Assembly: GCA_002269645.1 (NCBI GenBank)
Contig: NIVC01002533.1
Coordinates: 1-64,000, forward strand
Origin: Macrostomum lignano
Lineage: Eukaryota
Length of the DNA stretch: 64,000 nucleotides
Direction of reading: 5' to 3'
Shown here piece after piece: positions 1-49,165 of this stretch. Position 1 is the stretch's first letter. The number at the start of each line of letters is the position of its first letter. A model generated the notes under the pieces. The model worked only from the letters and a program-made list of their open reading frames with translations, had not been told where the DNA came from and made no database searches. Made by a program: the position numbers and the translations under genes.

Positions 1-237
1 TCTATGTACTATCGTACTTTACTTTTTACAATCAATCTTTGCGCATAGCTTGACTGCGCATTTGGGGCAAAAAATGTGCGCCTCTCTCCCAGTAATGAAA
101 ATGGCAGTCCAGCACCCATCCTCAGGATTCCCGTTGCCACCGTGATGCCACCCTCGGTTTCCTTTTCCCCTCCTAAACTGATGATTTTAAATATTCTGCT
201 TTGTTTTAAACTCGCAGCACCCACTTTCTGTACTTCA

Positions 238-2252
238 TCGAAGCTGCTATTTTTTGTGCCGAGGCGCCGACGGACAAGCGACGAAGCTTCCGTGCTGTCA
301 GCAGTTCGTCTACCTCGGCTGTCTGGTGCCTGACGTTTGCGAGGACCTGCGACGTCTTCGTGACTTGCCTGGGCTGCTTTCCGTTCCGTGAGGGTTGTCC
401 TGCAGTCCGAGGCGCTGCCCGACTGCCAGAGGGCGGCGTTGTTCCAGGTGGTAATCGAGACCGTCCTGCTGTACAACGCCGAGACCTGGACGCTGACGGA
501 TTCGCTCGAACAGCTGGTCGATGCGGCGCACGCTGGCCTGCTGCGCGCCGCCTTCAAGATCGGCTACGAGCGAGTGACCAATGCGGCACTCTATCGCCGC
601 ACCGGCCTGTCCCGCCCCAGCGAACTGTTGCGCCGTCGCGACTCCAGCTGGCAGGCCAGTTCATCCGAGCCGAGTCGTACTGCTCACAGCCGGTGCAGGA
701 GGTGCTGCTACTGACGCTACAGGCACCCTACCGGCGGGGGCAGGCGCGTACTCGGCGTTTCGTCGACTGCCTGCTGGCTGATGCCGGCGCCCCGGACAAC
801 TGCCCGGCGCCGCCTAGGTTCGCGCCCAGGCCTTGAAACGCGCCTTGTGACATTGTCTGCTAACTGATTGACAACAACAACAACAACAACAAGGTACTGC
901 TCCCGCCGGCCACGCAGTAGCCAGAAAGGGGGGAGCAGTCAGAAAGCGCGTCTCTGGGCCATTGCCCTCAGGAAGTCGCATCCCCCTGCTTGGTCCGGGC
1001 GCCAGCGTCACTCAAAAGTCGGTTAGGGTATCGCACCGTTTGCCCTTGGCCTCGCCTCCGCGGTCCCTGCAGCTTGAGCAGCAGCACGTCGTGTAGCGGC
1101 TCAGGACAGCGGGCCTCCGACCGGATGACGTGGCCAGCCAGTCGAAGTCGCCGCCCGCGCAGCAGGTCAGAAGGCCGCGTCAGGCGCGCCTAGTGTAGAG
1201 CGCGGCATTGGTCTCGCTGCCTGGGCCGCTGCGCACTCCGAAAGCCGCACGCAGCATTGCCGCATGCGCAGCGTCCAGCTGCCTCTCCAAGGCGTCCGTC
1301 AGGGTCCAAGTCTCGGCGTTGTACAACAGGACAGTCTCGACGACTGCCTGAAACAGCGAGCCTTGAGCCCGTCGTCCAGGGCCTCAGATTGGAGCACGGA
1401 GCGCACAGATCGAAATGCGGCCCAGGCCAGTCCTCGTCGTCTCTTCAGGTCGTCGGCAACGTCCGGCACGGAACCGCCGAGGTACACAAAGCGCTCGCAG
1501 CGGGTAAGCATAAATGCATTCCCGGCAGCGTCTCGGTAATTGATCTCGGCCGGCAAGTCGGAGGGCACCGTGAACACTACCGTCTTCCGCGCGTTCAGCT
1601 TAAGGCCGACCGCGACGCTGCCGCCATCAGGCCATCAAGCAGCCGCTGGGCACCTTCAGCCGTCGATGAAAGTAGCGCGAGGTCGTCCGCGTAGCCGAGA
1701 ACGGAGAGCCGCTTCTCCGGGTGCCACCGACTCGTGCGTCTTCTCAAAAGGAAGCCGTCATCCAGGTTGGGCAGGCCGGTTTTCAGCACCCAGTCCAGTG
1801 CCAGCACAAACAGAAAAGGCGCCAAAGTGTCACCCTGCAGCACGCCTGACGACGTGCTGAATTGATCTGACAGTCCATCTGGCGTCATCACCGAAGCGGT
1901 CGTGTCCTGGTACATCGCCATGATGGCGGAAATCAGTTGCTCCGGTACATTGTACGCACGAAGCACGAGAGGCAGCGCGCCGCGAGCCAGCGAGTCGAAG
2001 GCCTTGAGGAAATCAATGAAGATCACCACGAGACTTGACTGATGGATGCGCGCCTCCTCGATGATGCGGCGGAGGGCTAGGATCTGCGTCACTGTGCCGC
2101 GATGTGGGCGGAACCCGTTCTGCTCAGTTCGCAGGAACTGGTCCAGCACAGGCTGTAACCGAGCCAGCAGCACCCGGTTGAACAGCTTCGGTTGTCCACT
2201 CGCGGGGCGCGGCCTGCGAGGTTTGATTGACAACGTATTTTGTTGTTGTTGT
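238..2252 (+). mobile_element. 5'-truncated RTE-type non-LTR retrotransposon (interrupted by a second RTE at 876-2223)
   Basis: RT C-terminal motifs FVYLG..EDLRRR.GLAWAAF and VLLYNAETWTLT. (TTG)n tail at ~2240-2252. Flanked by 9-bp direct repeat TGTACTTCA at 229-237 and 2253-2261. Confidence 0.88.
876..2223 (-). mobile_element. 5'-truncated RTE-type LINE nested in the 3' UTR of the + strand RTE
   Basis: ORF 1595-2272 carries RT motifs QNGFRPHRG, FIDFLKAFDS, GVLQGDTLAPFLF and YADD; ORF 1299-1577 continues with FVYLGG. (CAA)n on + strand at 872-892 is the tail. TSD TGATTGACAAC at 865-875 and 2224-2234. Empty site at ~56145-56155. Confidence 0.93.
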
Positions 2253-2350
2253 TGTACTTCAGAAATATTCATACAAACGGATCAAGCGGCTCCAATATGC
2301 ATGTGCTCTGCCCGAGGTTTATTGGCCAGACTTTAACCATTTGGAAGCCA

Positions 2351-3060
2351 AAGGCCTGCACTGCAGGCCATATCGAAACGGCCCAAAAATCCAGAGATTG
2401 AACAATGTCTATGGCATCAAAAACCATCTCCCAATCACTAAAGCAACTGCCCAGTATGGCCTGCTGTGCAGGTCATGATTGATTTAAAGAAGTCCATTGT
2501 GCATTTCCGTTATGTTTTCACTCAAATGTTAAAGGTGAAATAAGCGTGTGCAGTGAAAATGAGGTGATGCACAAATGTATGTTTTGGTCGTATTAAATGT
2601 AGCTAACTTTAATCACTTCACTTTCGTCTGGATTTTCTGGTAGATCGATGCTTGGATTGATGGTCGAAACCCTCGGAATTCCGGCCGTCATGGTCAAACG
2701 AGTTGTCATTTCGACCCTTTTTACTGGGTCCAGGGGGCTAATTCAACCCATTCCGCGGTCGCCTCATCTTGGCTCTCATCAGTTTCTGGATCCATACTTT
2801 CCGACTCCGTTTCTGACTCAAAAACCGTTGAGTCATCGCTTGATAAAGCGTCTTCCGAATCGGAATCGAGTCCCAGTCTGCGCAAGGCGTCACTTTTAGC
2901 TGTCCTTATCGGGCGCGTAGAAGCAATTTGTGGGTAGGAAGGTTTGAACAGGAGCTAGCAGAAAAAGTCTGTGGTATACTTTACTTCTGGGCTTCTAGGG
3001 TGTGCACTCGATTCAGCAAAAAAGACAAATTTGTCTATGGACTGCTCTGCAGGCCTTTGA
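2351..3060. mobile_element. Putative non-autonomous TIR element
   Basis: CAAAGGCCTGCACTGCAGGCCATA (~2350-2373) is an imperfect inverted repeat of TATGGACTGCTCTGCAGGCCTTTG (~3037-3060). A third arm lies at ~2454-2474. No TSD identified. Confidence 0.4.
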
Positions 3061-3739
3061 GCTTTTAAGCGATCTTACAGAACCAAGTTTGGTATATAGC
3101 TATGATTATTGGTAATATCAGATATTTGGCAATAATGAAGCTGAACTTGTGCTAAACGGCTCTGTTTTGTTTCAAACTGCTTTCTGTCTGCGTAGCAATG
3201 GATAAATAATCAGCGGTCCAGTGTCGTGCTGCGACCGCTGATTATTTGCATTGTTATACTGCTTGATCATCCTACAAACAATGCATTGTTAGTAGTAATA
3301 TATTGTTCTGCATAAAAATGTAAATAATGATCGTCAAATTGCTAGACAATGAATGGAGGCTTCACGTGCGACAGATTTTGTAGCTATTTTGAGGAATTCG
3401 TGTAGAAAGACATCACCACAAGTTTCGATTTTGAATTACAAAATGTACATTTCATGTATCTGAATTGCGTGTATCTGCAAGTTCAGCTTATTTCATTTTT
3501 ATATTTATTAGTCGATTTTCGTTGCAAAAATACTTTCGGCTCCTATCTGTGCAGCGAGAAAATTAAATATCATTTGCAGCTTACAATTGGAGGAGCATAA
3601 TACGGCATGTGCATCTACTTGTACGAGTACCATGTGAAATTATGTTGTGTATGAACGAGTATATAGTGTGCCAGGATTCCAAGAGTGAACTGAGTGTAAA
3701 AGTGTGAGTGTGAGAGAGACAGTGAGAAAGTGAGTGTGA

Positions 3740-3985
3740 GGGAGTGAGTGAAAAAGTGAGTGAGAGAGTGAGGGTGAGAGAGTGAGGGTGAGAGAGTGAG
3801 AGTGAGAGAGTGAGGGTGAGAGAGTGAGGGTGAGAGAGTGAGGGTGAGAGAGTGAGGGTGAGAGAGTGAGGGTGAGAGAGTGAGGGTGAGAGAGTGAGAG
3901 TGAGAGAGTGAGGGTGAGAGAGTGAGGGTGAGAGAGTGAGGGTGAGAGAGTGAGGGTGAGAGAGTGAGGGTGAGAGAGTGAGGGT
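3740..3985. repeat. Minisatellite, ~12-bp unit GAGAGTGAGGGT
   Basis: Direct reading of the tandem unit; the paralogous array is at ~58600-58865. Confidence 0.9.
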
Positions 3986-5847
3986 TAGTTAAATTTCCAA
4001 CACAATTCAATTTACAATAAAATTCAACTTACAATAAAGTTCTATTTCCAAAACAAGTAAACATAAAAACACTTCAATTTCATACCGGTTTTTGTTTTTG
4101 GGTCCAGTTGGTTTTCAAACCTTCATCAGTCACATAAGCAAAAGTGCCTGTCTGGGCGAAGTTTTAAGGGCACTTTTTCTAATCCAGCCATTGGCCGATG
4201 TCAGGGACTCTGTCCGAGATATCAATAATTGAATAGCGACGCATGCAGGAGGGGGGATATTTCTGCGTATGGGAATTCTTAATCACTTTGATTATTTATA
4301 AAACATAAAATACAGGGACATACATACAACAAAACAATTTTTATGGAAGCAATCATGCTAGCTACTGGCTCCGGTTTAAGACGGGTTTTAAGATCAGAAA
4401 GCCAAATTCATATAGAGAGAAATAGCTATAGCTAGCTAATTAGAAAATATAGGAATTCAGCACTTGCTTAATAATAATAACGCTGAAGTGCTTGATAAAA
4501 TGTCCATAATTGGGTCATTTTGGGAGATTTATAAATTGAATAACATAAGGGAGAGTTCCGCCTCCGCCAGCGTACGCCACTATAGCTATATACATTCAAT
4601 ATCGAGCAAAATATTATTTAAACATATTGTGACCAACATAGCTGAATCCCACACATAAACAAACCCAAACAAAGGAGAATATCGTAAAACCTAAGTTAAA
4701 TCTATTAGTTAAAATTTGATAATGCAAGGCTTAGCTATTGTGAGGAAACTCAAGGGGTCAGAAGTCTCAACAATTGAATGACAGAATTCAATGTGTAGGC
4801 AAGGGTGAACTATTAAGATACCAGTAAAGCTAAATAACAGTTAATAACAACTAATTCACTAGGATTAGCAATTTGATTCCATTAGCTACACGAAAACGAA
4901 GCACAAAAAAGCCCACAGGAAAGCAAATTCACTTGGTTAAACTGAGTATCGATGAAATGAGAAATATGATTATGGATCATGCTAAAGCAAATGAATGTAA
5001 CATAAAATAAGAGATATCAATATCAATTTAAAGCCAAAAACTGACTTCAAACTTAAAACAGGGTTTAATCATGGAGGAAAGAATCTATTCATGGCTTTAA
5101 TATGTTATCAAATAATTCTTCATAGGTTTCGACAGTTCTCAAAAAAATCAGGCAAAGGAAAATGTGAGAATTACAATATTCTAATTAACTCACTTCTAAA
5201 TTAATACTCTGTAACCATTATTTAGTAGTAAAATCGATTTAACTAATAAAACAAAAAGGATAAAAAAATCAGCATTTAAAAGTCCACTTCAGTAGCATTT
5301 ATTGGTATCCCACAGAATGCAACTACTCGTATTACTACGAGTAACACAAACAGGATTAGCAATGCCAATAAACTGATCAGCATTTAAAGGTTCTATTTAT
5401 CAGCATTTTGCAGTCGCTACGAGTATGCATAAACCACAGAAAATACACAGAAAAGTTAGTCAGCTCTCTCGCACAGAACCTGCTGATGTAGCAAGTTTGC
5501 TTTATACCTCTTTTAATTGATTAGGAGACATGCTTATACCACGAGCTAACAAAGAATAGCAGTTGAAGTCGCATGGTGGTTTACCAATAGCTATAACAAT
5601 TATTTAAGTTTTCTAACAAATTTACTAGAATACTCGCAATTTTACCAGATGTATCTCATCCTTGATTTTCAAAAGAAATAATTTCGAACTCACTTGTTTC
5701 AAGCCAGTTTAAAGCTAGTTTTAGTAACCAACTTAAACAACCAACCATTCCATGCATTATTCTGTGGTACTACCATGACATTGACAATATTAACAACAGA
5801 AACTTCCAGAACAAGGTACCGTCTGTTGCCTTGCCTATGGCCTAAAA

Positions 5848-8413
5848 TTACCTTCTTAACTTAAAAATGTTGGCTATTGCCCCAAAAAAGACAGCACGCC
5901 TTGAGCGAACAAAACTTGACAGTCGATCAAAAACAAGCTTGCACTGAAATTGTTCGCAGATTGATAAAACAGACCGACGTGAGCTATCTCTGTCAGTGAG
6001 ACAGTCTGGTCCGAGCTCGTTCACCAGCCACTCGAGTGCTGAGCTGCTCACAGCATTGAAAGCAGCACAGTGCACTGCTGTCATGTTCTTCCATCCTCTC
6101 AGCTTGAAACACTCGACTCCATTCATCTTCTCTTTGATGAACTGCATTGATTCCGCCTTCTGGAACTCAGCCGCAATGTGGATGACTGTGTCATTGTTTG
6201 CATCTCTGTCAGTGAGACAGTCTGGACCGAGCTCGTTCACCAGCCACTCGAGTGCTGAGCTGCTCACAGCATTGCCAGCAGCCAGTGCACTGCAGTCCTG
6301 TTGATCATTCCTCTCAGCTTGAAACACTCGACTCCATTCATCTTCTCTTTGATGAACTGCATTGATTCTGCCTTCTGGACAGAAGCCGCAATGTGGATGA
6401 CCGTCAAGTTATCTGCATCTTTATCAGTGAGACAGTCTGGTCCGAGCTCGTTCACCAGCCACTCGAGTGCTGAGCTGCTCACAGCATTGCCAGCAGCACA
6501 GTGCACTGCAGTCATTTTGTTCATTCTTCTCAGCTTGAAACACTCGACTCCATTCATCTTCTCTTTGATGAACTGCATTGATTTCGCCTTCTGGAACGCA
6601 GCCGCAACGTGAATAACTGTGTCACTGTTTGCATTTCTGTCAGTGAGACAGTCTGATCCGAGCTCGTTCACCAACCACTTAAGTGGTGAGCTGCTCACTT
6701 CATTGCAAGCAGCACGGTGCACTGCAGTCATGTTGTTTATTCCTCTCAGCTTGAAACACTCGACTCCATTCATCTTCTCTTTGATGAACTGCATTGATTC
6801 CGCCTTCTGGAACTCAGCCGCAATGTGGATGACTGTGTTATTGTTAGCAGCTCTGTCAGTGAGACAGTCTGGTCCGAGCTCGTTCACCAGCCACTCGAGT
6901 GCTGAGCTGCTCACAGCATTAAAAGCAGCACAGTGCACTGCAGTCTTGTTTTGCCTTCCTCTTAGCTTGAAACACTCGACTCCATTCATCTTCTCATTGA
7001 TGAACTGCATTGATTCCGCCTTCTGGAACTGAGCCGCTATGTGGATGACTGTGTTATTGAATTGATCTCTGTCAGTGAGACAGTCTGGTCCGAGCTTGTT
7101 CACCAGCCACTCGAGTGCTGAGCTGCTCACAGCATTGCAAGCAGCCCAGTGCACTGCAGTCCTGTTGTTGAATCCTATCAGCTTGAAACACTCGACTCCA
7201 TTCATCTTCTCTTTGATGAACTGCATTGATTCCGCCTTCTGGAACTCAGCCGCAATGTGGATGACTGTGTCATTGTCTGCATCTCTGTCAGTGAGACAGT
7301 CTGGTCCGAGCTCGTTCACCAGCCACTCGAGTGCTGAGCTGCTCACAGCATTGCAAGCAGCCCAGTGCACTGCAGTCCTGTTGTTGAATCCTCTCAGCTT
7401 GAAACACTCGACTCCATTCATCTTCTCTTTGATGAACTGCATTGATTCCGCCTCTGGAACTCAGCCGCAGTGTGGATGACTGTTAAATTTTTTGTATCTC
7501 CGTCAGTGAGACAGTCTGTTCCGAGCTCGTTCACCAGCCACTCGAGTGCTGAGCTGCTCACAGCATTGCATGCAGCACGGTGCACTGAAGTCATGTTTTG
7601 CCTTCCTCTCAGCTTAAAACACTCGACTCCATTCATCTTCTCTTTGATGAACTGCATTGATTCCGCCTTCTGAAACTGAGCCGCAATGTGGATGACTGTG
7701 TCATTGTTTGCATCTCTGTCAGTGAGACAGTCTGGTCCGAGCTCGTTCACCAGCCACTCGAGTGTTGAGCTGCTCACTTCATTGCAAGCAGCACAATGCA
7801 CTGCAGTCATGTTGTTAATTCCTCTCAGCTTGAAACACTCGACTCCATTCATCTTCTCTTTGATGAACTGCATTGATTCCGCCTTCTGGAACTCAGCCGC
7901 AGTGTGGATGACTGTGTTATTGTTAGCATCTCTGTCAGTGAGACAGTCCGCTTCGAGTTCGAAAATCAGCCATTGGAATGTCGATCCATGATCTGTGAGA
8001 TTCTCTGCTGCCCTATGCATCACTGTTTTCTGCCTGCTATCTCTTGCTTCGAATGGGTTCCAGTCCGCTTCTACTGCCTGCAGCTTCTGTTTCAGGAACT
8101 CCATCGTCTCCGCAGTCTGACTCTTTGCTGCCAGGTGAGTCACCGAGTCGCCATCGCTATCAACCAGCCGAAATATGTCGACCCCGTGCCCCATCTCCAG
8201 TAATCGAAGAACCGGCAGTCCGTCTCTGTCCCGAGCTGCAGCAAAAATGACGCCTTTGGCGAAGTCTTCTCCAGGTCCGACGATGCTCTCGGACACCTGG
8301 AACAGCAGATCATCATTGAGCTGTTCGTCTCCGTCTGCTACTGCTTGATGGATCTGCCTATAGAGATGCTGGGATGCCTCGTATTCGCTGGACTCGCTGG
8401 GACTCAGAGCTCT
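5848..8413 (-). pseudogene. Ankyrin-repeat gene copy Ank1, main exon; 9 x 72-aa units; two -1 frameshifts (pseudogene or assembly error)
   Basis: ORFs 7418-8296, 6264-7442 and 5848-6327 join into one ankyrin ORF (TVIHIAA / TAVHCAA motifs, 216-bp period). 1-bp losses at ~7453 (GCCTCTGG vs GCCTTCTGG) and ~6283 (GCAGCCAGTG vs GCAGCCCAGTG). Splice acceptor ATTTCAG before 8413. Confidence 0.88.
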
Positions 8414-8526
8414 CTGAAATCGGATGAGGCAGATAGTTATAATTAGTCTAGGTTAATTAAAGGCCTATGACATTGGCAGTGAAACTTAAGGACATATAGG
8501 TAAATTGGGAAGGGCAGAGCAGAAAC

Positions 8527-8601
8527 ATTTTCGCTCGGTTCGGTCGTGAGTGTCGTGCTATGTGACTGCAAAGTGGCAGAGCAGTTGTTTTCCGCTATCA
8601 T
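8527..8601 (-). CDS. Putative first coding exon of Ank1 (MIAENNCSATLQSHSTTLTTEPSEN)
   Basis: 75-nt ATG-initiated segment conserved in all four copies. It ends at a phase-0 GT (weak GTTTCT donor) that matches the phase-0 acceptor of the main exon. Confidence 0.4.
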
Positions 8602-8604
8602 GTT

Positions 8605-9640
8605 GATGGGCTGCCGTGTCATCACCTGGCAGCCTTTCCGACTTTTTTCGACATGATCTTTGTAGGTAAAGCGCGATATATGAGAAAGCAGCATTTCTGT
8701 TTGTCCGTTGCTCAACTTGGTGGTGCCGCTATCTACACTTCCTATCAACGACGTCTACGAGTACTCTCTGCTTCGGCGGGGTGTATGCAGAAACTAGCAG
8801 AATTCGCGAGAGACAGCCGATGATATCGCGCTGCTGTCCTTTAACCTCTACGCGACAGGTGGTGCTTGGCATCACCCTTGTTGCCAACGGCTGTGCCGAA
8901 ATCGGGACATAGACTATTTGACAGTCGCTTCGAACAACTTTGTTAGTTTTCCTAGGAGCCACGTTGAAATCAATTAGACCATGGCCGGGTTCCATTTGAT
9001 TGCCGAACTGCCACATGTCATTGGTGTTATCGACTGCACAAATGTCGCTATCAAGAGTCCAACTAACAATGAGTATGTTTTTGAGAACAGAAAATCGTTT
9101 TATTCTATTAATGTTCAAGCTGTGTGCAGTGTCGCAATGTCATTCACGAACATTCTAGTACGCCGGCCGAGAAGTACACACGATTCTTTCATATTCAACA
9201 ACTCTGCATTAAAGGAGATTCTATCAGAAGTGTTAGTGGCAGTATTCCTCGTCGGAGATAGTGGATATCCTCTGAGACCATTTCTCATGAAGGTTTTCGA
9301 CACTCCAAAAGAGATGCAAGAGAGACCGACTTCAACCGGAGGCTGCGACAAACTCGGGTGAAAATAGAATGTTCATTCGGGATTCTAAAGTCTCGATTTT
9401 AATGCCTGAATCGTCATTCCGCAAGTCTCCGATTCCATCCGAGCAAGTTTTGCTTGATAATAAGCGCCTGTTTTGTGCTGCATAACATTGCGATCAACAG
9501 AGGAGTTCCACTGGTTGTGCCGATCCAGCCTGACATCAATGACGAACCGGAGTATGTTGGCGTCGATGATATTGGAGCTAGAAGAGCCGAGCGAATTCGC
9601 ATCGTACATTTGATACAACATGCAAGTAATCAGTAAAGAG
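8605..9640 (+). mobile_element. Degenerate PIF/Harbinger transposase remnant
   Basis: ORF 8981-9361 has VIGVIDCT, NRKSFYSINVQAVC, STHDSFIF and LVGDSGYPL; downstream IECSFGILKSRF and ACFVLHN motifs lie in shifted frames. Confidence 0.85.
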
Positions 9641-9643
9641 GCC

Positions 9644-10600
9644 CTAGAGCTGGGCCATGGTGGGCACGAGGGGCAGCCCCTTGGCGGCGCGGTTGTTCCG
9701 GATTTCGGTCTGGAGCTCGAGCGGGAGGCGGTTCCAGAATGCGTAGACGCGGCTGTCGAGGGTGCACGCGAGCTCACCTAGGCGGAGTAACTGGCCGGTA
9801 GCGAGTCGGAGGGCGTCGGTGTAATTCTCGAGCTCATCCAAGTCGGAGGCGGAGCTGCAGTGAAGAGCGAAAAGGATCTGGAAGAAGGCGTTTTTCTGCT
9901 CCTGGGCATCGGCGTAGTTGGCCTGGAGGACGCGGCAGGCTTCGGCGTAGGCGTTGGGCTGGCAAGCGTCGAGGGCGCCAAGCTTCCGGAGTGCCGGGCC
10001 AGAGTGAAGACCGCGGAGCGCCTCAAACTTATCGACGTCGTTGAGACTGGATTGGTCGACGCGGTAGAGGAAGGCGTTCCAGAACCCGGGGAATGCGGTT
10101 GGGTTGGTGCCGTCGAATGTCGGGAGACGAACCTTCTGGAGAACAGTGGAGTGGATTAGAGCGGCCGGATCGCTATCGCTGGTTGCGGACGACGACGCAG
10201 ATGTCAGGGCAGGATGGGAATTAGCGGCGAGCTGTTGTATGAGCAGCTGATTCTGCTGCATCATGGCGGTCATAGCGGTCAGGAGGGCGTTGATATCGAC
10301 GGAGGCAGCGGGAGCTGCTGCAGGGATCGCAGTTGTGGATGGAGCAGCGGGAAGAGCAGATGTCGCGGCTGCTGAAGCAGCAGGCGGCGGGTCACTGGCT
10401 TTGACGTGCGGCTGCTCCGCGTCGATTGGCGCTTCAGCAGAGGCTGTGCTGTGGTCGTTCTTGGACTGCTTGATCTGGTCGCCAGATAGGTCAGTTGTTG
10501 ATCGCGTGATAACCATGGTAATCCGGACGCTCTGCTACCAATTTGTAGAATAGATTCGTCGAGGAAGAGAGAGGAACCACGCTCTGCTACCAATTTGTGG
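9644..10600 (-). mobile_element. BEL/Pao LTR retrotransposon remnant: gag (DUF1759-like) ORF plus primer-binding site
   Basis: ORF 9644-10516 has LPTFDG..F..FW..F and L.DVDKF..LR. PBS TGGTAGCAGAGCGTGGTT (10575-10592, minus strand) resembles the complement of an initiator-Met tRNA 3' end. Confidence 0.78.
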
Positions 10601-12066
10601 AATTTGACAATAAACTAATATTGAACGAGCGGTTAGCGGGGAAGGAATCAGTAGAAGAGAAGCAGAGGTGAAGGGCCGAGGCCGCGAGTTGAACTTGTAT
10701 TTGTACTAACATAGCGAACAGGGTAGCTGAAATGTCTGTGGCAAATTAACGGTTATGCTAGTCTGTGGGAAAAGCGTGGTAGACGAAGGGAGCCAGCTAA
10801 CTGAAAAGTACGAGTCTTTATTGCAAAACAGAAAGTAGAAATATTTGAAGGATGAAATCGCCAAGACCTCGAATTTGACAAACTTGCTCGGATAGCTAAT
10901 GAAGTCAGTGTTGCTGCCTGCAAGATAGGTGAAGAATTTCTACTTTCTAGACAAGCAGGTCATTAACATGGAACTCTATCGCATCGCAGAACTGACACGG
11001 TGTCTTCGGCTGCGTCGACGGTCTCACCCTGCTATTCTCAACAACAACAACAACAACTGTTCTCAACTAGTGATGAGGCGCTAACGAATGATGCTCGCCA
11101 ATGGTGCCTCATTCCTTTGGTTATTGCGCTTGTACTTTGCTTCCACAGCTTCTACTTAATAATTAATAATATAACTACTTAATAATAATAAGTCAAAGAC
11201 TTTCTGCCACCCAGCTCAGCCTCAGACACTTCGAGATGTTAAATCAGCAAGCAGTGCGACTTGATGAAATATTGGCTTTCATGCTGACCTGACATCCTTG
11301 ATGCTGGATGCCATCAGAGTCCCATAACCATTTAAATATCTGTCGCTCGAGTGCAGGAAGGAAAGTCGCGTTGCAAGAACAGGACTTCAGGAAAGCTTGA
11401 ATAAATAAGCAACGCAATAATTGTACTTTATATCGACAATCATTTATTTATTTTGGATAAACGCAATAAAATATACTTATTACCAGTCAATGGGGTAGTG
11501 GGTGCATAATGTACAGAGAAACAGCTTAATGATATTACGAGCTAAGTCGTAACCAAGTTACCAAGAACACAGGTGAGTCAACAATGACTAAACGCATCCA
11601 GTCTTAGCGCGTTCATACGCTGGTGTGACATGCTGAACTTCTCAACACTTCTTGCAAGTCGCTCAGGCAACAGCCGAATGGTTGACATATGATGTCATGT
11701 GATCGCCCTTGCGGATCATGCAGGTCTGAAATGCTGCGACTCCGAGACGTCTCAAAGCGCCACTGAAATTCTTGTCATTGTCAACTTCGCGGCAGCTGTT
11801 GAGTACATCGCGCATAACACAAAAAACAGAAACTGCGGTGATTCTCAGCCAAAGATGCAAAAATTATATTTCGTAATATTGCAGAGGGTGGACCCAAATA
11901 AGTACAAATCCTAAGAAAAAACTGCTTAGTTATTTGATCTAAAAATGGATTCAGATTACCTGATCACTACGAGAAACCGTGTATTTAATAATGACAATAA
12001 TGCTGAGTTTACGTAAAAAAAAACAGCACGGCAAACACAATAGACAGCCAGCTGCTTAGTGCTCAC

Positions 12067-12187
12067 CTCAGCCATGGAGCTGCTCGAGTGCCTTCGGCTG
12101 CTCAAGGGCGGCTGAGTCGCTGCCGAGGTGCTGACAGAGCTGATGTGCTGCGCTGAGTTTGAGATGCGTCTGAGAATGGAGGAGGGA
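12067..12187 (-). other. Upstream exon of the ankyrin gene unit (ends ...SSSMAE|GTGAGC)
   Basis: TTTTAAG acceptor and GTGAGC donor. Homologues at 33558-~33728 and 48536-48656. Coding status is unclear. Confidence 0.5.
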
Positions 12188-12199
12188 CTTAAAATGACG

Positions 12200-14212
<2,013 letters not shown>

Positions 14213-15140
14213 ACTCACCGGTTACTCTTTGTGAACTGTGCTGTGAGGATTCAGAAGCAAAACAGTAAAGTTATGCCTGTAGCTTCTGTAGCTTCTCTGC
14301 TCCAAAAAGCCAATGCAGTCGAAGAAAATTCTCGAGTCTGCCTGAGGCCGATGTGAGCTGAGGCGCTCCAAGAGGCCCCTTCTGCATCTCTTAAAGAGAA
14401 GCTCGAAACGAAGAAAGGCTGGTATCAGGATAGGAAATCATGGCTGATGATTAGGATCGAGAATCAAGAATGGAAATCATGATTGGGAAAAATGATTGGG
14501 GATCATGAATGGGAATCATATGATTGAGATCAAGATTATTAGTTGTTTCCCAGGGGTTCACGCCCCGCATGTGTTCAAGGCAGCTCTAGGGCTGCTGGAC
14601 TGACTGGGCTCCGGCGGCGGCAACCCATCTGTGGCCTGCTGGCCAATTTGGGTACGGGCCCCGCCCGGAAGTGAACCTGTGCGTATCAGGTACCTCTGGC
14701 CACGGCTCTGAGGAACAGGTATCACCCTCTGACCTTAACAGGGTATGCGGCCAGTCCGCAAGTTCCGGGGACGGTCTCTTGTCCCCCTAAAGGGCCCAGT
14801 GTAGTACCGCGCTGATGGACCTTTGGTTCGGCCTCTGGTTTTTCCAAGCCGGGCCCTTAGCCGGGGAGTTTCTCGGTTGCCAGCGGTCGGGCCGGTAAGG
14901 GCTTAAGCCACCCCCCGGTCGCTACCTCTTGGCCTGGCTGGTGGGTTTGGGGCTACGGCCCAGCGGCTTTTCACCTTTAGTCCCCATTCGCCTTTCAGCG
15001 ACTCATTCATTTACATCCACACGTCCGAGGCTGCTGGAGCACCAACCGAGGTTGGTACCGCGGTCCAGCCGGACATTCGCAACACCGGAACCCCCGGTGC
15101 CTCCCAGTCAGCCCCTGCCGCCGCTCAGGACAATACCGGA

Positions 15141-16467: not shown

Positions 16468-16471
<4 letters not shown>
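15141..16471 (+). pseudogene. LINE ORF1 (frameshift near 15500; DUF4780-like RAWIP..LL..NP region)
   Basis: ORFs 15141-15521 and 15497-16471 lie directly upstream of the APE ORF. The domain call is by motif resemblance only. Confidence 0.6.
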
Positions 16472-20028
<3,557 letters not shown>

Positions 20029-28393: not shown

Positions 28394-30259
28394 TTAGCGA
28401 ACTAATCTTGACAGTCGATCGAAAATTTGCCTGCTCTGACGTAGTTCGCAGATTGATAAAGCAGACCGACGTGAACTATCAGTGTCAGTGAGACAGTCTG
28501 GTCCGAGCTCGTTCACCAGCCACTCGAGTGCTGAGCTGCTCTCTTTATTGAAAGCAGCCCAGTGCACTGCAGTCCTGTTTTGCATTCCTCTCAGCTTGAA
28601 ACACTCGACTCCATTCATCTTCTCTTTGATGAACTGCATTGATTCCGCCTTCTGGAACCCAGCCGCAGTGTGGATGACTGTGTTATTGTTAGCATCTCTG
28701 TCAGTGAGACAGTCTGGTCCGAGCTCGTTCACCAGCCACTCGAGTGCTGAGCTGCTCACAGTATTGATAGCAGCACAGTGCACTGCAGTCCTGTTTTGCA
28801 TTCCTCTCAGCTTGAAACACTCGACTCCATTCATCTTCTCTTTGATGAACTGCATTGATTCCGCCTTCTGGAACCCAGCCGCAGTGTGGATGACTGTGTT
28901 ATTGTTAGCATCTCTGTCAGTGAGACAGTCTGGTCCGAGCTCGTTCACCAGCCACTCGAGTGCTGAGCTGCTCACAGTATTGATAGCAGCACAGTGCACT
29001 GCAGTCCTGTTTTGCATTCCTCTCAGCTTGAAACACTCGACTCCATTCATCTTCTCTTTGATGAACTGCATTGATTCCGCCTTCTGGAACTCAGCCGCAA
29101 TGTGAATGACTGTGTTATTGTCTGCATCTCTGTCAGTGAGACAGTCTGGTCCGAGCTCGTTCACCAGCCACTCGAGTGCTGAGCTGCTCACAGCATTGCA
29201 AGCAGCCCAGTGCACTGCAGTCCTGTTGATCATTCCTCTCAGCTTGAAACACTCGACTCCATTCATCTTCTCTTTGATGAACTGCATTGATTCCGCCTTC
29301 TGGAACCCAGCCGCAATGTGGATGACTGTGTTATTGTTAGCATCTCTGTCAGTGAGACAGTCTGGTCCGAGCTCGTTCACCAGCCACTCGAGTGCTGATC
29401 TGCTCACAGCATTGAAAGCAGCACAGTGCACTGCAGTCCTGTTGTTGAATCCTCTCAGCTTGAAACACTCGACTCCATTCATCTTCTGTTTGATGAACTG
29501 CATTGATTCCGCCTTCTGGAACTGAGCCGCAATGTGGATGACTGTGCTATTGTTTGTATCTCTGTCAGTGAGACAGTCTGGTCCGAGCTCGTTCACCAGC
29601 CACTCGAGTGCTGAGCTGCTCACTTTATTGAAAGCAGCACAGTGCACTGCAGTCCTGTTGTTGAATCCTCTCAGCTTGAAACACTCGACTCCATTCATCT
29701 TCTCTTTGATGAACTGCATTGATTCCGCCATCTGGAACAGAGCCGCAGTGTGGATGACTGTGTCATTGTCTGCATCTCTGTCAGTAAGACAGTCCGCTTC
29801 GAGTTCGAAGATCAGCCATTGGAATGTCGATCCATGATCTGTGAGATTCTCAGCTGCCTTATGCATCACTGTTTTCTGCCTGCTATCTCTTGCTTCGAAT
29901 GGGTTCCAGTCCGCTTCTACTGCCTGCAGCTTTTGTTTCAGGAACTCCATCGTCTCCGCAGTCTGACTCTTCGCTGCCAGGTGAGTCACCGAGTCGCCAT
30001 CGCTATCAACCAGCCGAAATATGTCGACCCCTTGCCCCATCTCCAGTAATCGTAGAACCGGCAGTCCGTCTCTGTCCCGAGCTGCAGCAAAAATGACGCC
30101 TTTGGCGAAGTCTTCTCCAGGTCCGACGATGTTCTCGGACACCTGGAACAGCAGATCATCAGTGAGCCGCTCGTCTCCAGCTGCTGCCGCCTGCTTGATC
30201 TGTCTGTAGAGATGCTGGGAGGCCTCGTATTCGCTGAACTCGCTGGGACTCAAAGCTCT
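28394..30259 (-). CDS. Ankyrin-repeat gene copy Ank2, main exon; 6 x 72-aa units; short C-tail
   Basis: Uninterrupted ORF of 619 aa in the track. CTAAT..ATTTCAG acceptor before 30259. Putative exon 1 at 30373-30447. Confidence 0.9.
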   Translation of the reverse strand, partial: RALSPSEFSEYEASQHLYRQIKQAAAAGDERLTDDLLFQVSENIVGPGEDFAKGVIFAAARDRDGLPVLRLLEMGQGVDIFRLVDSDGDSVTHLAAKSQTAETMEFLKQKLQAVEADWNPFEARDSRQKTVMHKAAENLTDHGSTFQWLIFELEADCLTDRDADNDTVIHTAALFQMAESMQFIKEKMNGVECFKLRGFNNRTAVHCAAFNKVSSSALEWLVNELGPDCLTDRDTNNSTVIHIAAQFQKAESMQFIKQKMNGVECFKLRGFNNRTAVHCAAFNAVSRSALEWLVNELGPDCLTDRDANNNTVIHIAAGFQKAESMQFIKEKMNGVECFKLRGMINRTAVHWAACNAVSSSALEWLVNELGPDCLTDRDADNNTVIHIAAEFQKAESMQFIKEKMNGVECFKLRGMQNRTAVHCAAINTVSSSALEWLVNELGPDCLTDRDANNNTVIHTAAGFQKAESMQFIKEKMNGVECFKLRGMQNRTAVHCAAINTVSSSALEWLVNELGPDCLTDRDANNNTVIHTAAGFQKAESMQFIKEKMNGVECFKLRGMQNRTAVHWAAFNKESSSALEWLVNELGPDCLTDTDSSRRSALSICELRQSRQIFDRLSRLVR

Positions 30260-31138: not shown

Positions 31139-31394
31139 GCATTTCATCTAGCTAGGAGTTCTAGTTTCTGATGCAGACATTGCTGCTGACTTGTCTGTGC
31201 TGCTTGAGGGCATTCTTGCGACTCATAGCCAACCAAAACGCGTCTAGCTGTAGAACGCCACGACCTCGAATTCGAAAAACTTGCTCGGGTAGCTAATGAA
31301 GTCTGTGTTGCTGCCTGCAAGATAGGTCACAAGCGGATCGTTAGTATGGAACTCTATCGCATCGCAGAACTGAGCTGGTAAGGCGATATTATTA

Positions 31395-33724: not shown

Positions 33725-34725
<1,001 letters not shown>

Positions 34726-41613: not shown

Positions 41614-43695
41614 TTAGCGAACTAATCTTGACAGTCGATCGAAAATTTGCCTGCTCTGACGTAGTTTGCAGATTGATAAAGCAGACCGACGTGAACTATC
41701 AGTATCAGTGAGACAGTCTGGTCCGAGCTCGTTCACCAGCCACTCGAGTGCTGAGCTGCTCACAGTATTGAAAGCAGCCCAGTGCACTGCAGTCCTGTTG
41801 ATCATTCCTCTCAGCTTGAAACACTCGACTCCATTCATCTTCTCTTTGATGAACTGCATTGATTCCGCCTTCTGGAACTGAGCCGCAATGTGGATGACTG
41901 TGTCATTGTCTGCATCTCTGTCAGTGAGACAGTCTGGTCCGAGCTCGTTCACCAGCCACTCGAGTGCTGATCTGCTCACTTTATTGAAAGCAGCACAGTG
42001 CACTGCAGTCCTGTTTCGCATTCCTCTCAGCTTGAAACACTCGACTCCATTCATCTTCTGTTTGATGAACTGCATTGATTCCGCCTTCTGGAACTGAGCC
42101 GCAATGTGGATGACTGTGTCATTGTCTGCATCTCTGTCAGTGAGACAGTCTGGTCCGAGCTCGTTCACCAGCCACTCGAGTGCTGATCTGCTCACTTTAT
42201 TGAAAGCAGCACAGTGCACTGCTGTCATGTTCTTCCATCCTCTCAGCTTGAAACACTCGACTCCATTCATCTTCTGTTTGATGAACTGCATTGATTCCGC
42301 CTTCTGGAACTCAGCCGCAATGTGGATGACTGTGTCATTGTTTGCATCTCTGTCAGTGAGACAGTCTGGTCCGAGCTCGTTCACCAGCCACTCGAGTGCT
42401 GAGCTGCTCACAGCATTGCAAGCAGCCCAGTGCACTGCAGTCCTGTTGTTGAATCCTCTCAGCTTGAAACACTCGACTCCATTCATCTTCTCTTTGATGA
42501 ACTGCATTGATTCCGCCTTCTGGAACTCAGCCGCAATGTGGATGACTGTGTCATTGTCTGCATCTCTGTCAGTGAGACAGTCTGGTCCGAGCTCGTTCAC
42601 CAGCCACTCGAGTGCTGAGCTGCTCACTTTATTGCATGCAGCACAGTGCACTGTAGTCTTGTTTTGCCTTCCTCTCAGCTTGAAACACTCGACTCCATTC
42701 ATCTTCTGTTTGATGAACTGCATTGATTCCGCCTTCTGGAACTCAGCCGCAATGTGGATGACTGTGTTATTGTTTGCATCTCTGTCAAGAAGACAGTCTG
42801 GTCCGAGCTCGTTCACCAGCCACTCGAGTGCTGAGCTGCTCACAGCATTGAAAGCAGCATAGTGCACTGCAGTTCTGTTTTGAAATCCACTCATCTTGAA
42901 ACACTCGACTCCATTCATCTTCTCTTTGATGAACTGCATTGATTCCGCCTTTTGGAACTGAGCCGCAATGTGGATGACTGTGTCATTGTTTGCATCTCTG
43001 TCAGTGAGACAGTCTGGTCCGAGCTCGTTCACCAGCCACTCGAGTGTTGAGCTGCTCACTTCATTGCAAGCAGCACAATGCACTGCAGTCATGTTGTTAA
43101 TTCCTCTCAGCTTGAAACACTCGACTCCATTCATCTTCTCTTTGATGAACTGCATTGATTCCGCCTTCTGGAACTGAGCCGCAGTGTGGATGACTGTGTT
43201 ATTGTTTGCATCTCTGTCAGTGAGACAGTCCGCTTCGAGTTCGAACATCAGCCATTGGAATGTCGATCCATGATCTGTGAGATTCTCAGCTGCCCTATGC
43301 ATCACTGTTTTCTGCCTGCTATCTCTTGCTTCGAATGGGTTCCAGTCCGCTTCTGCTGCCTGCAGCTTCTGTTTCAGGAACTCCATCGTCTCCGCAGTCT
43401 GACTCTTTGCTGCCAGGTGAGTCACCGAGTCGCCATCGCTATCAACCAGCCGAAATATGTCGACCCCGTGCCCCATCTCCAGTAATCGAAGAACCGGCAG
43501 TCCGTCTCTGTCCCGAGCTGCAGCAAATATGACGCCTTTGGCGAAGTCTTCTCCAGGTCCGACGATGCTCTCGGACACCTGGAACAGCAGATCATCAGTC
43601 AGCCGTTCGTCTCCGGCTGCTACCGCCTGCTTGATCTGCCTAAAGAGATGCTGAGAGGCCTCGTATTCGCTGAACTCGCTGGGACTCAGAGCTCT
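41614..43695 (-). CDS. Ankyrin-repeat gene copy Ank3, main exon; 7 x 72-aa units; short C-tail
   Basis: Uninterrupted ORF 41614-43578 (654 aa = 117 + 7x72 + 33), open back to the acceptor at 43695. Putative exon 1 at 43809-43883. Confidence 0.9.
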   Translation of the reverse strand, partial: RALSPSEFSEYEASQHLFRQIKQAVAAGDERLTDDLLFQVSESIVGPGEDFAKGVIFAAARDRDGLPVLRLLEMGHGVDIFRLVDSDGDSVTHLAAKSQTAETMEFLKQKLQAAEADWNPFEARDSRQKTVMHRAAENLTDHGSTFQWLMFELEADCLTDRDANNNTVIHTAAQFQKAESMQFIKEKMNGVECFKLRGINNMTAVHCAACNEVSSSTLEWLVNELGPDCLTDRDANNDTVIHIAAQFQKAESMQFIKEKMNGVECFKMSGFQNRTAVHYAAFNAVSSSALEWLVNELGPDCLLDRDANNNTVIHIAAEFQKAESMQFIKQKMNGVECFKLRGRQNKTTVHCAACNKVSSSALEWLVNELGPDCLTDRDADNDTVIHIAAEFQKAESMQFIKEKMNGVECFKLRGFNNRTAVHWAACNAVSSSALEWLVNELGPDCLTDRDANNDTVIHIAAEFQKAESMQFIKQKMNGVECFKLRGWKNMTAVHCAAFNKVSRSALEWLVNELGPDCLTDRDADNDTVIHIAAQFQKAESMQFIKQKMNGVECFKLRGMRNRTAVHCAAFNKVSRSALEWLVNELGPDCLTDRDADNDTVIHIAAQFQKAESMQFIKEKMNGVECFKLRGMINRTAVHWAAFNTVSSSALEWLVNELGPDCLTDTDSSRRSALSICKLRQSRQIFDRLSRLVR

Positions 43696-44920: not shown

Positions 44921-44921
44921 A

Positions 44922-48679: not shown

Positions 48680-49165
<486 letters not shown>

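What the first reader, a model, noticed from the sequence alone, without database searches (positions are those of the whole stretch)
5848..12200. Ank1 is a chimera: Ank3-type 5' half and promoter side, Ank4-type 3' half and flank
Seen: the Ank1 upstream region (Harbinger + BEL gag), N-terminus and unit 1 (GINNMT..CNEVSSST) match Ank3. Its last units, C-tail (SSRRSVLSICEQFQCKL...KLRR) and ~5.8 kb of 3' flank match Ank4. Ank2 and Ank3 share the short C-tail and 3' flank but have different upstream regions. So 5' and 3' halves are reassorted, and unit counts differ (9, 6, 7, 8). Inference: unequal crossover inside the 216-bp array both swaps halves and changes repeat number, which is a combinatorial diversification mechanism.
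Basis: partly seen in the sequence, partly recalled or inferred. Interest (0 to 1): 0.75.

Follow-up and report, generated by a model that had tools for sequence, protein, structure and literature searches.

The report
Mosaic ankyrin-repeat paralog in flatworm cluster
One of four neighbouring ankyrin-repeat genes (probably from a Macrostomum-like flatworm) really is a patchwork: its front end is copied from one neighbour and its last repeat and tail from another. It is a multi-layer mosaic with two frame-breaking 1-bp deletions, made by ordinary homologous exchange between repeats, not a clean half-and-half product of a special diversification mechanism.

Summary
The four minus-strand genes, their 216-bp arrays and the unit counts 9/6/7/8 are real. 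Ank1's 5' flank, N-terminus, u0-u1 and u3-u4a are Ank3-type (1.3% divergent over 4.1 kb, sharing a derived Harbinger + BEL-gag insert). Its last unit, C-tail and at least 5.8 kb of 3' flank are Ank4-type (1.5%; informative sites 21:0:0). So Ank1 is chimeric, but not as two halves. Only the last unit matches Ank4 closely, and the 3' junction lies at about 6132-6197. The core (u2, u4b-u8) matches nothing closely and carries 23 private bases. The Ank3-type tract is bounded, ending at an (ACAG)n satellite beyond which divergence is 11.8%, which looks like conversion. Ank1 also has two 1-bp deletions (about 7453 and 6282) that split its ORF: either a pseudogene or consensus errors. The family shows 85% unit identity, ten hypervariable codons on the ANK recognition face (dN/dS 1.62 against 0.36), identical adjacent units, and parallel arrays in M. 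lignano. This regime is known from fungal NLR repeats, so this is a new (metazoan) member of a known kind. Mis-assembly cannot be excluded without reads.

The parts
5848..8413 (-). Ank1 coding exon as assembled: acceptor-like TTTCAG| at 8414/8413, N-terminal capping region, degenerate unit u0, nine MQFIK-anchored units (anchors 7873, 7657, 7442, 7226, 7010, 6794, 6578, 6362, 6147), long C-tail and stop at 5848. Broken into three frames.
7453..7454 (-). Frameshift 1: a 1-bp deletion in unit u2 (CAG-AGG where the paralogs have CAGAAGG).
6282..6283 (-). Frameshift 2: a 1-bp deletion in unit u8 (CACT-GG where the paralogs have CACTGGG).
7130..12206 (-). Recent Ank3-type tract: upstream flank, N-terminus, u0, u1 and u2end-u4a. 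About 1.3% divergent from Ank3 43231-47302/48492-48675. Contains the orphan unit u2 (7443-7657) and a one-unit slip relative to Ank3 u3b-u4.
8929..11687 (.). Derived replacement shared only by Ank1 and Ank3 upstream: Harbinger DDE_Tnp_4 fragment 8981-9361(+) and BEL/Pao gag-like DUF1759 ORF 9644-10516(-). Ank2 has instead sequence weakly homologous to Ank4's upstream.
6283..7129 (-). Ank1 core (u4b-u8a): collinear with Ank4 u3b-u7 by hypervariable patches, but 4-10% divergent in framework. Carries private bases, and u8 is Ank2/3-pool-like.
6132..6197 (-). 3' junction interval, between the last Ank3/Ank2-type diagnostic site (u8+166) and the first Ank4-type site (u9+15). Lies in the invariant framework ...QKAESMQFIKEKMNG...
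1..6132 (-). Recent Ank4-type tract: last unit u9, long C-tail and 3' flank. 1.49% divergent from 55270-61042 and runs off the window start. Has a private 1.35-kb RT-bearing insert at 875-2224.
12207..14215 (.). Compound (ACAG)n satellite bounding the Ank3-type tract. Counterparts lie upstream of Ank2 (33723-34730) and Ank3 (48676-49175).
14216..14419 (.). Older Ank1/Ank3 homology beyond the satellite (24/204 = 11.8% divergent). Homology ends at 14419/49394.
28394..30259 (-). Ank2: 6 units, short C-tail, intact ORF, u4 identical to u5.
41614..43695 (-). Ank3: 7 units, short C-tail, intact ORF. Partner of Ank1's 5' tract.
60743..63103 (-). Ank4: 8 units, long C-tail, intact ORF, most diverged array. 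Partner of Ank1's 3' tract.

Best explanation
Ank1 is a real, multi-layer mosaic paralog in a tandem cluster of ankyrin-only genes whose 72-aa units (two 36-aa ANK repeats) are internally highly conserved.

An older Ank4-lineage copy ('proto-Ank1', still visible as the diverged, collinear core u4b-u7) had both ends overwritten at about the same recent time by non-allelic homologous exchange with its neighbours. (i) A tract of about 5 kb from Ank3 runs from the (ACAG)n satellite through the TE-bearing upstream region and N-terminus into unit u4. (ii) A tract of at least 6 kb shared with Ank4 runs from the u8/u9 boundary through the C-tail into the 3' flank. Each tract has one end inside the 216-bp array, where invariant framework segments of 65-100 bp provide in-register homology. 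Smaller unit-scale exchanges (one-unit slip, u8 converted to the Ank2/3 type, orphan u2 probably from a copy outside the window) add further layers.

The same process, acting within and between arrays, changes unit number and reshuffles hypervariable patches. Selection favours amino-acid change at ten recognition-face codons and purifies the scaffold. Ank1 itself, as assembled, is frame-broken, so it is at best a recently inactivated copy and a possible sequence reservoir.

Shown: the mosaic anatomy, the junction positions, the divergence layers, and the selection pattern. Inferred: the order and direction of events, conversion versus double crossover, and function.
For: - Discordant nearest relatives: 5' side 1.30% from Ank3 over 4066 bp, with a shared derived insert; 3' side 1.49% from Ank4 over 4221 bp, with 21:0:0 informative sites.
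- Ank4's own 5' region is 22% (upstream) and 5-7% (exon) divergent from the others, so Ank1 is the discordant copy. Ank2 and Ank3 are concordant on both sides (3.3% and 2.5%).
- Copying-model painting puts the breakpoints at u4+96 (7130) and u8/u9 (6132-6197).
- The tract is bounded at the satellite: 11.8% against 1.3%, p = 3e-14.
- The core is collinear with Ank4 by patches (QF-N; RQNK..RAANNN; RNA-N; G..KDADNL) but has 8-18 framework differences per unit and 23 private bases.
- Unit-scale exchange is visible: A2.u4 = A2.u5; A1.u3 differs from A3.u4 by 1 nt, out of register; two four-gamete violations between patches.
- Hypervariable codons 19, 20, 22, 27, 30, 32, 56, 58, 63, 66: pi 0.37 against 0.043; dN/dS 1.62 against 0.36. 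The register on TPLHxAA comes from alignment to solved ANK structures.
- M. lignano relatives have their own 213-bp array varying at the same positions, and sit as tandem neighbours.
Against: - No read-level support, and every junction coincides with a repeat, which is also where assemblers fail.
- The equal divergence of both tracts could instead be heterozygosity.
- Ank1's flanks show an excess of 1-bp deletions (12 against 4), compatible with lower consensus quality.
- Conversion tracts of 5-6 kb are long for interlocus conversion.
- The window may miss better donors, so the 'old core' could be a recent copy of an unseen paralog.
- Direction of transfer (Ank1 as donor or recipient) is undetermined.
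- No expression or functional data.
Confidence: 0.62

Rival explanations
1. Assembly artefact. The Ank1 locus is a mis-join or consensus blend. The Ank3-type and Ank4-type tracts would be the alternative haplotypes (or unplaced paralog reads) of Ank3's upstream and Ank4's downstream, stitched through the (ACAG)n satellite and the 216-bp array. The two 1-bp deletions would be polishing errors.
For: - All discontinuities sit in repeats.
- The two tracts are equally divergent (1.30% and 1.49%), as expected for genome-wide heterozygosity.
- G1 has 12 one-bp deletions against 4 in its partners.
- Published Macrostomum assemblies used PacBio/canu with haplotig purging and Arrow/Pilon polishing, and did see separate haplotypes (PMC10468722).
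- In a comparable fungal repeat, a 1-bp deletion in a long-read assembly was shown to be a misassembly, and short-read assemblies created chimeric repeats (PMC12222747).
Against: - The Ank1 core carries 23 bases absent from every unit of Ank2-4, so it is not a blend of them. A third real locus would be needed, plus mis-joins on both its sides within 8 kb, which is shorter than typical long reads.
- The satellite has ordered higher-order structure, not noise.
- The flanks carry private kb-scale TE indels.
- Neither frameshift is in a long homopolymer.
- I do not know which assembly or technology the window comes from.
Confidence: 0.17
2. One reading: one in-register unequal crossover between an Ank3-type and an Ank4-type gene created Ank1 in a single step (5' half from Ank3, 3' half from Ank4), with later divergence confined to the array.
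For: - Equal divergence of both flanks.
- An in-phase switch at A1.u4+96, from A3.u4+96 to A4.u3+97, makes Ank1 u4b-u9 collinear with Ank4 u3b-u8.
Against: - Interior framework divergence from Ank4 is 4-10%, against 1.5% in the flank.
- u8 is Ank2/3-type and u2 is an orphan.
- The 5' tract is bounded at the satellite.
- Gene order and flanks are not those of the predicted duplication product (Ank4 - chimera - Ank3).
Confidence: 0.13
3. Ank1 is the donor, not the recipient. An intact ancestral Ank1 supplied its upstream region to Ank3 and its last unit and 3' flank to Ank4, so those genes are the 'chimeras'.
For: Sequence identity is symmetric, and no outgroup polarises the tracts. Ank4's last unit and flank are its only parts that are close to anything else.
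Against: Ank3 is concordant with Ank2 on both sides at 2.5-3.3%. The Harbinger/gag insert would then have to be transferred into Ank3. This is possible, but it still requires exchanges ending in the arrays, so the mechanism is unchanged.
Confidence: 0.08

Closest known systems
Fungal NLR/STAND repeat domains with 'high internal conservation' (Podospora HNWD WD40 genes; ANK and TPR NLRs). Paoletti 2007 PMC1805685; Chevanne 2010 PMC2873952; Dyrka 2014 PMC4986451
   Same: - Tandem repeats about 85% identical to each other.
- Repeat-number differences.
- Repeat exchange within and between paralogs by unequal crossing-over and conversion.
- Positive selection on a handful of positions on the interaction surface (for ANK: the beta-hairpin/loop and inner helix).
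- Frame-broken alleles occur.
   Different: - No NACHT/NB-ARC or effector domain here: the proteins are ANK-only, and some M. lignano relatives carry a C-terminal kinase.
- The unit is a di-ANK of 72 aa.
- The genes form a tight tandem cluster in an animal, where such repeats are rare (0.8% of ANK/TPR/WD proteins in metazoa, PMC4986451).
- No link to non-self recognition has been shown.
Hybrid genes from non-allelic homologous recombination in tandem families (haemoglobin Lepore/anti-Lepore, red/green opsin hybrids, plant R-gene clusters). From general knowledge
   Same: The 5' part and promoter side come from one paralog and the 3' part and flank from another, with the junction in shared homology and copy number changing.
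   Different: Those are single clean crossovers with the predicted duplication or deletion structure. Ank1 has bounded tracts, at least three age layers and a junction inside an intragenic tandem array.
Designed ankyrin repeat proteins (DARPins; randomised positions 2, 3, 5, 13, 14, 33 of a consensus ANK module). From memory, not tested against a DARPin sequence here
   Same: Invariant scaffold with variation concentrated just before the T of TPLH and just after the AA. Window codons 19, 20, 22, 30 (and +36) correspond to module positions 2, 3, 5, 13.
   Different: This is a natural family. Additional variable positions follow the H (27/63) and lie at 32. The repeats are 36 aa, not 33.
Interlocus gene conversion in multigene families (MHC, KIR, globins). 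From general knowledge
   Same: Bounded tracts of near-identity between paralogs embedded in older divergence, with end points in repeats.
   Different: Tracts here are 5 kb and at least 6 kb, much longer than typical conversion tracts, and they include non-coding TE-bearing flank.

Membership tests
Ankyrin-repeat proteins (Pfam clan Ank) | Significant matches to the ANK repeat profiles across the protein | tested here: met
   Ank_2 E 7.8e-48 (Ank4) and 1.4e-39 (Ank2), above the curated cut-offs. TAVHxAA aligns to TALHLAA of NOMPC and espin.
High-internal-conservation (HIC) repeat regime, as defined for fungal NLRs | Repeats at least about 85% identical to each other over at least 100 aa | tested here: met
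   Mean pairwise unit identity is 84.9% aa over 26 units. Within-gene values are 80.7-90.7% aa and 87.6-95.3% nt. Ank4 alone falls below 85%.
High-internal-conservation (HIC) repeat regime | Repeat-number polymorphism | tested here: met
   9/6/7/8 units among paralogs, and an identical adjacent pair A2.u4/u5. Allelic polymorphism is not testable here.
High-internal-conservation (HIC) repeat regime | Positive selection at a few positions on the interaction surface | tested here: met
   Ten hypervariable codons have dN/dS 1.62 against 0.36 in the framework and pi 0.37 against 0.043. Placement on the recognition face is by sequence register only; the AF2 model failed.
High-internal-conservation (HIC) repeat regime | Repeat exchange within and between family members | tested here: met
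   A1.u3 differs from A3.u4 by 1 nt, out of register. A3.u4b-u5a matches A1.u8b-u9a with 2 mismatches in 197. All four genes paint as mosaics.
NOD-like receptor (NLR/STAND) | Central NACHT or NB-ARC nucleotide-binding domain | tested here: not met
   Pfam finds only ANK families in the window proteins. The M. lignano relatives are ANK-only or ANK plus protein kinase.
Lepore-type hybrid gene from a single unequal crossover | Two-parent structure: every segment closely matches one of two parents, with a single switch | tested here: not met
   Six of ten units have no close parent, 23 bases are private, and minimum-cost painting needs at least 8 segments.
Lepore-type hybrid gene from a single unequal crossover | Open-ended exchange and the predicted duplication order (5'-donor locus continues upstream) | tested here: not met
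   Identity drops from 98.7% to 88% across the satellite, and homology ends at 14419/49394. The chimera is not located between Ank4 and Ank3.
Interlocus gene conversion / double exchange | Tract of near-identity bounded on both sides by older divergence | tested here: inconclusive
   Met for the Ank3-type tract (7130 to about 12206). The Ank4-type tract runs off the window start, so its far end is unknown.
SL trans-spliced gene with leader-donated AUG | Acceptor site with no in-frame ATG downstream, leader ending in AUG in frame, and SL-containing reads | tested here: inconclusive
   A conserved TTTCAG| acceptor and absence of an ATG in all four genes. The M. lignano SL ends in ATG (PMC8629364) and would be in frame. 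The species and RNA evidence are unavailable.

The most novel reading that the evidence does not exclude
This cluster could be an animal counterpart of the fungal high-internal-conservation recognition repertoires. It would be a germline family of cytosolic, DARPin-like ankyrin binders, with relatives wired to a kinase output. Their recognition surfaces would be diversified by selection on about five positions per ANK repeat and continually re-dealt by array-mediated exchange among tandem paralogs, with frame-broken copies such as Ank1 serving as cassette reservoirs. The likely role would be non-self or pathogen sensing, or sexual-conflict interactions, in macrostomid flatworms.
Probability: 0.2. 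Interest if true: 0.7.

Novelty: new member of a known kind. Interest (0 to 1): 0.42.

Why it matters
Internally near-identical ANK/WD/TPR repeats with hypervariable binding positions are the basis of rapidly evolving recognition repertoires in fungi, and they are rare in animals. A flatworm cluster with the same signature offers a tractable metazoan case for studying how array-mediated exchange and selection interact. Relatives in M. lignano include kinase fusions, which suggest a sensor-plus-output architecture. Practically, it is a warning for annotation. Such loci are where assemblies and gene models fail, with frameshifts, mosaic units and start codons possibly supplied by the spliced leader. 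A 'chimeric gene' should not be taken as functional or as real without read-level proof.

Tried and rejected
- **AF2 model.** A single-sequence AlphaFold2 model of four units, meant to place the hypervariable residues in 3-D, failed (mean pLDDT 42). I discarded it and relied on the sequence register against solved ANK proteins.
- **Within-gene clustering.** I expected units to cluster by gene, the classic concerted-evolution signature. The permutation test was negative overall (within 8.4 against between 7.9 framework differences). The pattern is heterogeneous: Ank2 and Ank3 are homogenised and Ank4 is not.
- **Four-way 5' block.** I tried it as a formal quartet test. It was only weakly informative (6:3:3), so I did not use it as the main evidence.
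- **Species test.** I asked whether the window is M. lignano itself. Identity to the best M. lignano gene is only about 72% nt and at most 50% aa, and there were no high-identity TE hits in two loci. The species remains unidentified, and no window-encoded protein is in the protein collection.
- **u2 as a fusion unit.** I considered that u2 is an Ank3 u2/u3 fusion from a one-unit deletion. I rejected this because mismatches are spread across the whole unit.
- **Noisy satellite as poor consensus.** I considered that the 'noisy' 2-kb (ACAG)n reflects poor consensus quality. I rejected this because it has ordered recurrent interruptions.
- **Literature.** A search for a described Macrostomum ankyrin family found nothing relevant.

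Full report
**1. What is in the window**

TRF finds four 216-bp arrays at 5986-7948, 28483-29794, 41705-43230 and 60881-62631, with 9.1, 6.1, 7.1 and 8.1 copies. All four lie in minus-strand ORFs.

An exact 15-mer anchor (the MQFIK codons) occurs 9, 6, 7 and 8 times, spaced at 216 bp.

Pfam identifies the proteins as ankyrin-repeat proteins and finds nothing else (Ank_2 E 1e-39 to 1e-47). Each 72-aa unit consists of two 36-aa ANK repeats.

The nearest relatives in 5.8 billion proteins are hypothetical proteins of the flatworm Macrostomum lignano, at 50% identity or less. Some are ANK-only and some carry a C-terminal protein kinase. Nucleotide identity to the best M. lignano gene is only about 72%. 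The source is therefore probably another macrostomid or a divergent paralog, and I could not identify it further. I found no paper describing this family.

**2. Checking the observation**

Self-comparison and pairwise alignments give the following.

| Comparison | Region | Divergence |
|---|---|---|
| Ank1 vs Ank3, upstream | 7949-12023 vs 43231-47302 | 53/4066 = 1.30% |
| Ank1 vs Ank4, 3' flank | 1-5985 vs 55270-60880 | 63/4221 = 1.49% |
| Ank2 vs Ank3, 3' flank | 4-5 kb | 2.5% |
| Ank2 vs Ank3, proximal upstream | 813 bp | 3.3% |

- The Ank1/Ank3 upstream region contains a Harbinger-type DDE_Tnp_4 fragment (8981-9361+, E 6.5e-17). It also contains a BEL/Pao gag-like DUF1759 ORF (9644-10516-).
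- Ank2 shares only the two ends of this region with Ank1 and Ank3. Its interior is weakly homologous (75-83%) to Ank4's upstream.
- So 8929-11687 is a derived replacement shared by Ank1 and Ank3 alone.
- The Ank1/Ank4 3' flanks also differ by three kb-scale indels. One is an RT-bearing insert private to Ank1 (875-2224).
- Homology between the two 3'-flank types stops exactly at the Ank2/Ank3 stop codon.
- From the last anchor to that point, informative sites split 21:0:0 for (Ank1,Ank4)|(Ank2,Ank3).
- Ank4's own 5' region is the outlier: 22% divergent upstream of the exon and 5-7% within it.

Ank2 and Ank3 are concordant on both sides. Ank1's 5' side nests with Ank3, while its 3' side pairs with the otherwise distant Ank4. 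Ank1 is therefore the discordant, chimeric copy. That part of the finding stands.

**3.

*Unit-by-unit comparison.*
- A1.u0, u1 and u3 are near-identical to Ank3 units (5, 2 and 1 differences). The u3 match is to A3.u4, which is out of register.
- Only A1.u9 is near-identical to an Ank4 unit (1 difference).
- Units u2 and u4-u8 have no close partner in the window (best 6-18 differences).

*Copying-model painting.*

| Ank1 segment | Best donor | Mismatches |
|---|---|---|
| 8898-7678 | Ank3, in register | 25/1221 |
| u2 | none good | 18 |
| 7453-7130 | Ank3 u3b-u4, with a one-unit slip | 1/324 |
| 7129-6283 | poor donors | - |
| 6282 onward | Ank4, in register | 13/511 |

*Site-by-site inspection.* Unit u8 follows Ank3.u4/Ank2.u3 throughout, and Ank4-type sites begin only at u9+15. 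This places the 3' junction at about 6132-6197, in invariant framework sequence.

*The core.* By its hypervariable patches, the core u4b-u8 is collinear with Ank4 u3b-u7. However, it differs at 7-18 framework sites per unit, which is 4-10%, against 1.5% in the flank.

Ank1 u2-u7 also carry 23 bases seen in no unit of the other three genes, while u1, u3, u8 and u9 carry 0-1. Ank1 therefore has at least three age layers rather than two halves.

*The frameshifts.* Ank1 has two 215-bp units, each with a 1-bp deletion. At about 7453/7454 it reads CAG-AGG where the paralogs have CAGAAGG. At about 6282/6283 it reads CACT-GG where they have CACTGGG. These split the ORF into three frames, while Ank2-4 are intact.

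**4. Mechanism**

Both recent tracts end inside the array. The Ank3-type tract also has a far end. Across the compound (ACAG)n satellite (12207-14215), divergence from Ank3 jumps from 1.3% to 11.8% (24/204; Fisher p = 3e-14). Homology stops altogether at 14419/49394.

A bounded tract is the signature of conversion or a double exchange, not of one open-ended unequal crossover. The gene order also does not fit the simple crossover product, because the chimera is not between Ank4 and Ank3.

The near-equal divergence of the two tracts suggests that they arose at about the same time.

Unit-scale exchange is directly visible:
- Ank2 u4 and u5 are 216/216 identical.
- Ank1 u3/u4a is a one-unit slip of Ank3.
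- A3.u4b-u5a matches A1.u8b-u9a with 2 mismatches in 197.
- There are two four-gamete violations between adjacent hypervariable patches.
- All four genes paint as mosaics.

My best explanation is an old Ank4-lineage copy whose two ends were recently overwritten by array-anchored homologous exchange with Ank3 and Ank4, with smaller conversions on top. The direction of transfer and the exact number of events are inferred, not shown.

**5. What the family looks like**

Across 26 full units, ten codons are hypervariable: 19, 20, 22, 27, 30, 32 and 56, 58, 63, 66. These are equivalent positions in the two half-units.

| Measure | Hypervariable codons | Framework codons |
|---|---|---|
| Nucleotide diversity (pi) | 0.37 | 0.043 |
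| dN/dS | 1.62 | 0.36 |

Alignment to solved ANK proteins puts TAVHxAAxN on the TPLHxAAxxG register. The variable residues therefore lie just before the T, after the H and after the AA. This is the beta-turn/inner-helix recognition face, and from memory it matches the positions randomised in DARPins. Dyrka et al. report the same face for fungal ANK repeats (PMC4986451).

Mean unit identity is 85% aa. Framework homogenisation is strong in Ank2 and Ank3 (2-5 differences per 186 nt) and weak in Ank4 (13).

M. lignano P0003 has its own 213-bp x 7.5 array (93% identity) that varies at the same first-repeat positions. A second ANK-kinase gene lies 9 kb away from it.

**6. Comparison with known systems**

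The combination of four features defines the regime described for fungal NLR repeat domains. These features are high internal repeat conservation, repeat-number variation, exchange within and between paralogs, and positive selection on interaction-surface positions (PMC1805685, PMC2873952, PMC4986451). In that work such repeats were rare in metazoa, at 0.8%.

The window genes share that regime but are not NLRs, because they have no NOD domain.

The hybrid-gene aspect resembles classical NAHR products such as Lepore haemoglobin and opsin hybrids (general knowledge). However, it fails the two-parent, single-switch and open-ended criteria.

I therefore class the finding as a new (metazoan, flatworm) member of a known kind.

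**7. Rival: mis-assembly**

*For the rival.*
- Every discontinuity lies in a repeat.
- The equal divergences could be heterozygosity.
- Ank1's flanks have 12 one-bp deletions against 4 in their partners.
- Published Macrostomum assemblies were PacBio/canu with haplotig purging (PMC10468722).
- In Podospora, a 1-bp deletion in such a repeat proved to be a misassembly (PMC12222747).

*Against the rival.*
- The 23 private bases in the core show it is not a blend of Ank2-4.
- Mis-joins would be needed on both sides of a third locus within 8 kb.
- The satellite has ordered structure.
- The flanks carry private TE indels.

I put the artefact at about 0.17. It can only be settled with reads. Whether the two frameshifts are real is roughly even odds.

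**8. Verdict**

The inference of array-mediated exchange is right in kind. The 'single unequal crossover swapping halves' and the 'combinatorial diversification mechanism' go beyond the evidence, and the product is frame-broken as assembled.

Interest is moderate. The chimera itself is ordinary NAHR. The family-level signature, an animal high-internal-conservation ANK repertoire, is the more interesting lead.

**9. Side observation**

None of the four genes has an in-frame ATG between the upstream stop and residue ~60. All four conserve a TTTCAG| acceptor: 8414/8413 in Ank1, with exon starts at 30259, 43695 and 63103 in Ank2-4. Ank4's similarity to the others rises from 78% to about 94% at that point.

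The M. lignano spliced leader ends in ...TTGCATG (PMC8629364). Trans-splicing there would donate an in-frame AUG, giving M-R-A-L-S-P-S-E. This is an inference and would need SL-containing RNA reads to confirm.

Noticed in passing
8413/8414 (Ank1), 30259 (Ank2), 43695 (Ank3), 63103 (Ank4), minus strand: All four genes lack an in-frame ATG before residue ~60 but conserve a TTTCAG| acceptor. The Macrostomum lignano spliced leader ends in ATG (PMC8629364) and would supply an in-frame start codon (M-RALSPSE...). Ank4 is 22% divergent from the others upstream of the acceptor and 5-7% downstream.
   Followed up: partly
29071-28640 (Ank2 units u4 and u5): Two adjacent 216-bp units are 216/216 identical, which indicates a very recent one-unit duplication inside an intact gene.
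   Followed up: yes
hypervariable codons of all arrays: Synonymous divergence at the ten hypervariable codons is also high (dS 0.34 against 0.09 in the framework). Either the variable patches are older lineages kept while the scaffold is homogenised, or multi-nucleotide changes or local hypermutability are involved.
   Followed up: no
12207-14215; also 33723-34730 and 48676-49175: An (ACAG)n satellite lies upstream of each of Ank1, Ank2 and Ank3. The Ank1 copy is a 2-kb compound array with recurrent interruptions (ACACTAAG x15, a 24-mer x9), and it coincides with a recombination-tract boundary.
   Followed up: partly
16468-20028 (+); 1595-2272 (-); 56979-58005; 47302-48492: A LINE-like element (APE endonuclease, RVT_1, RNase H) lies between Ank1 and Ank2. 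An RT fragment sits in a 1.35-kb insert private to Ank1's 3' flank. Inserts of about 1 kb and 1.19 kb are private to the Ank4 flank and the Ank3 upstream region.
   Followed up: partly
23784-24168 vs 37900-38032; 3704-3985 vs 58576-58867; 31394-32509 vs ~63487-63526; 49985-51660; 35358-35819: Many minisatellites (21, 14, 29 and 13 bp units) differ strongly in copy number between otherwise 97-98% identical duplicons (for example 18 against 6 copies, and 38 copies against about one). The 29-bp array at 31394-32509 is open in three frames on the minus strand, which is presumably spurious.
   Followed up: no
L002 10315-11895 (M. lignano NIVC01000934.1): The ANK-kinase gene P0003 has an independent 213-bp x 7.5 array at 93% identity. 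Variation is confined to the same positions of the first ANK of each unit, and a second ANK-kinase gene lies 9 kb downstream.
   Followed up: partly
about 8300-8340 (Ank1 N-terminal exon; columns ~470-510 of alignment A1): Ank1 has a cluster of private changes here. It includes a compensated +4/-4 indel (QIHQAVAD where the others read QIKQAVAA), and accounts for much of the 3.3% exon divergence from Ank3, against 1.3% in the flank.
   Followed up: no
Ank4 array 60881-62631: Ank4's units are far less homogenised than those of Ank2 and Ank3 (13 against 2-5 framework differences per unit; 81% aa identity). Every unit except the last carries 4-10 private bases. Only its last unit and 3' flank are close to another copy.
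   Followed up: partly
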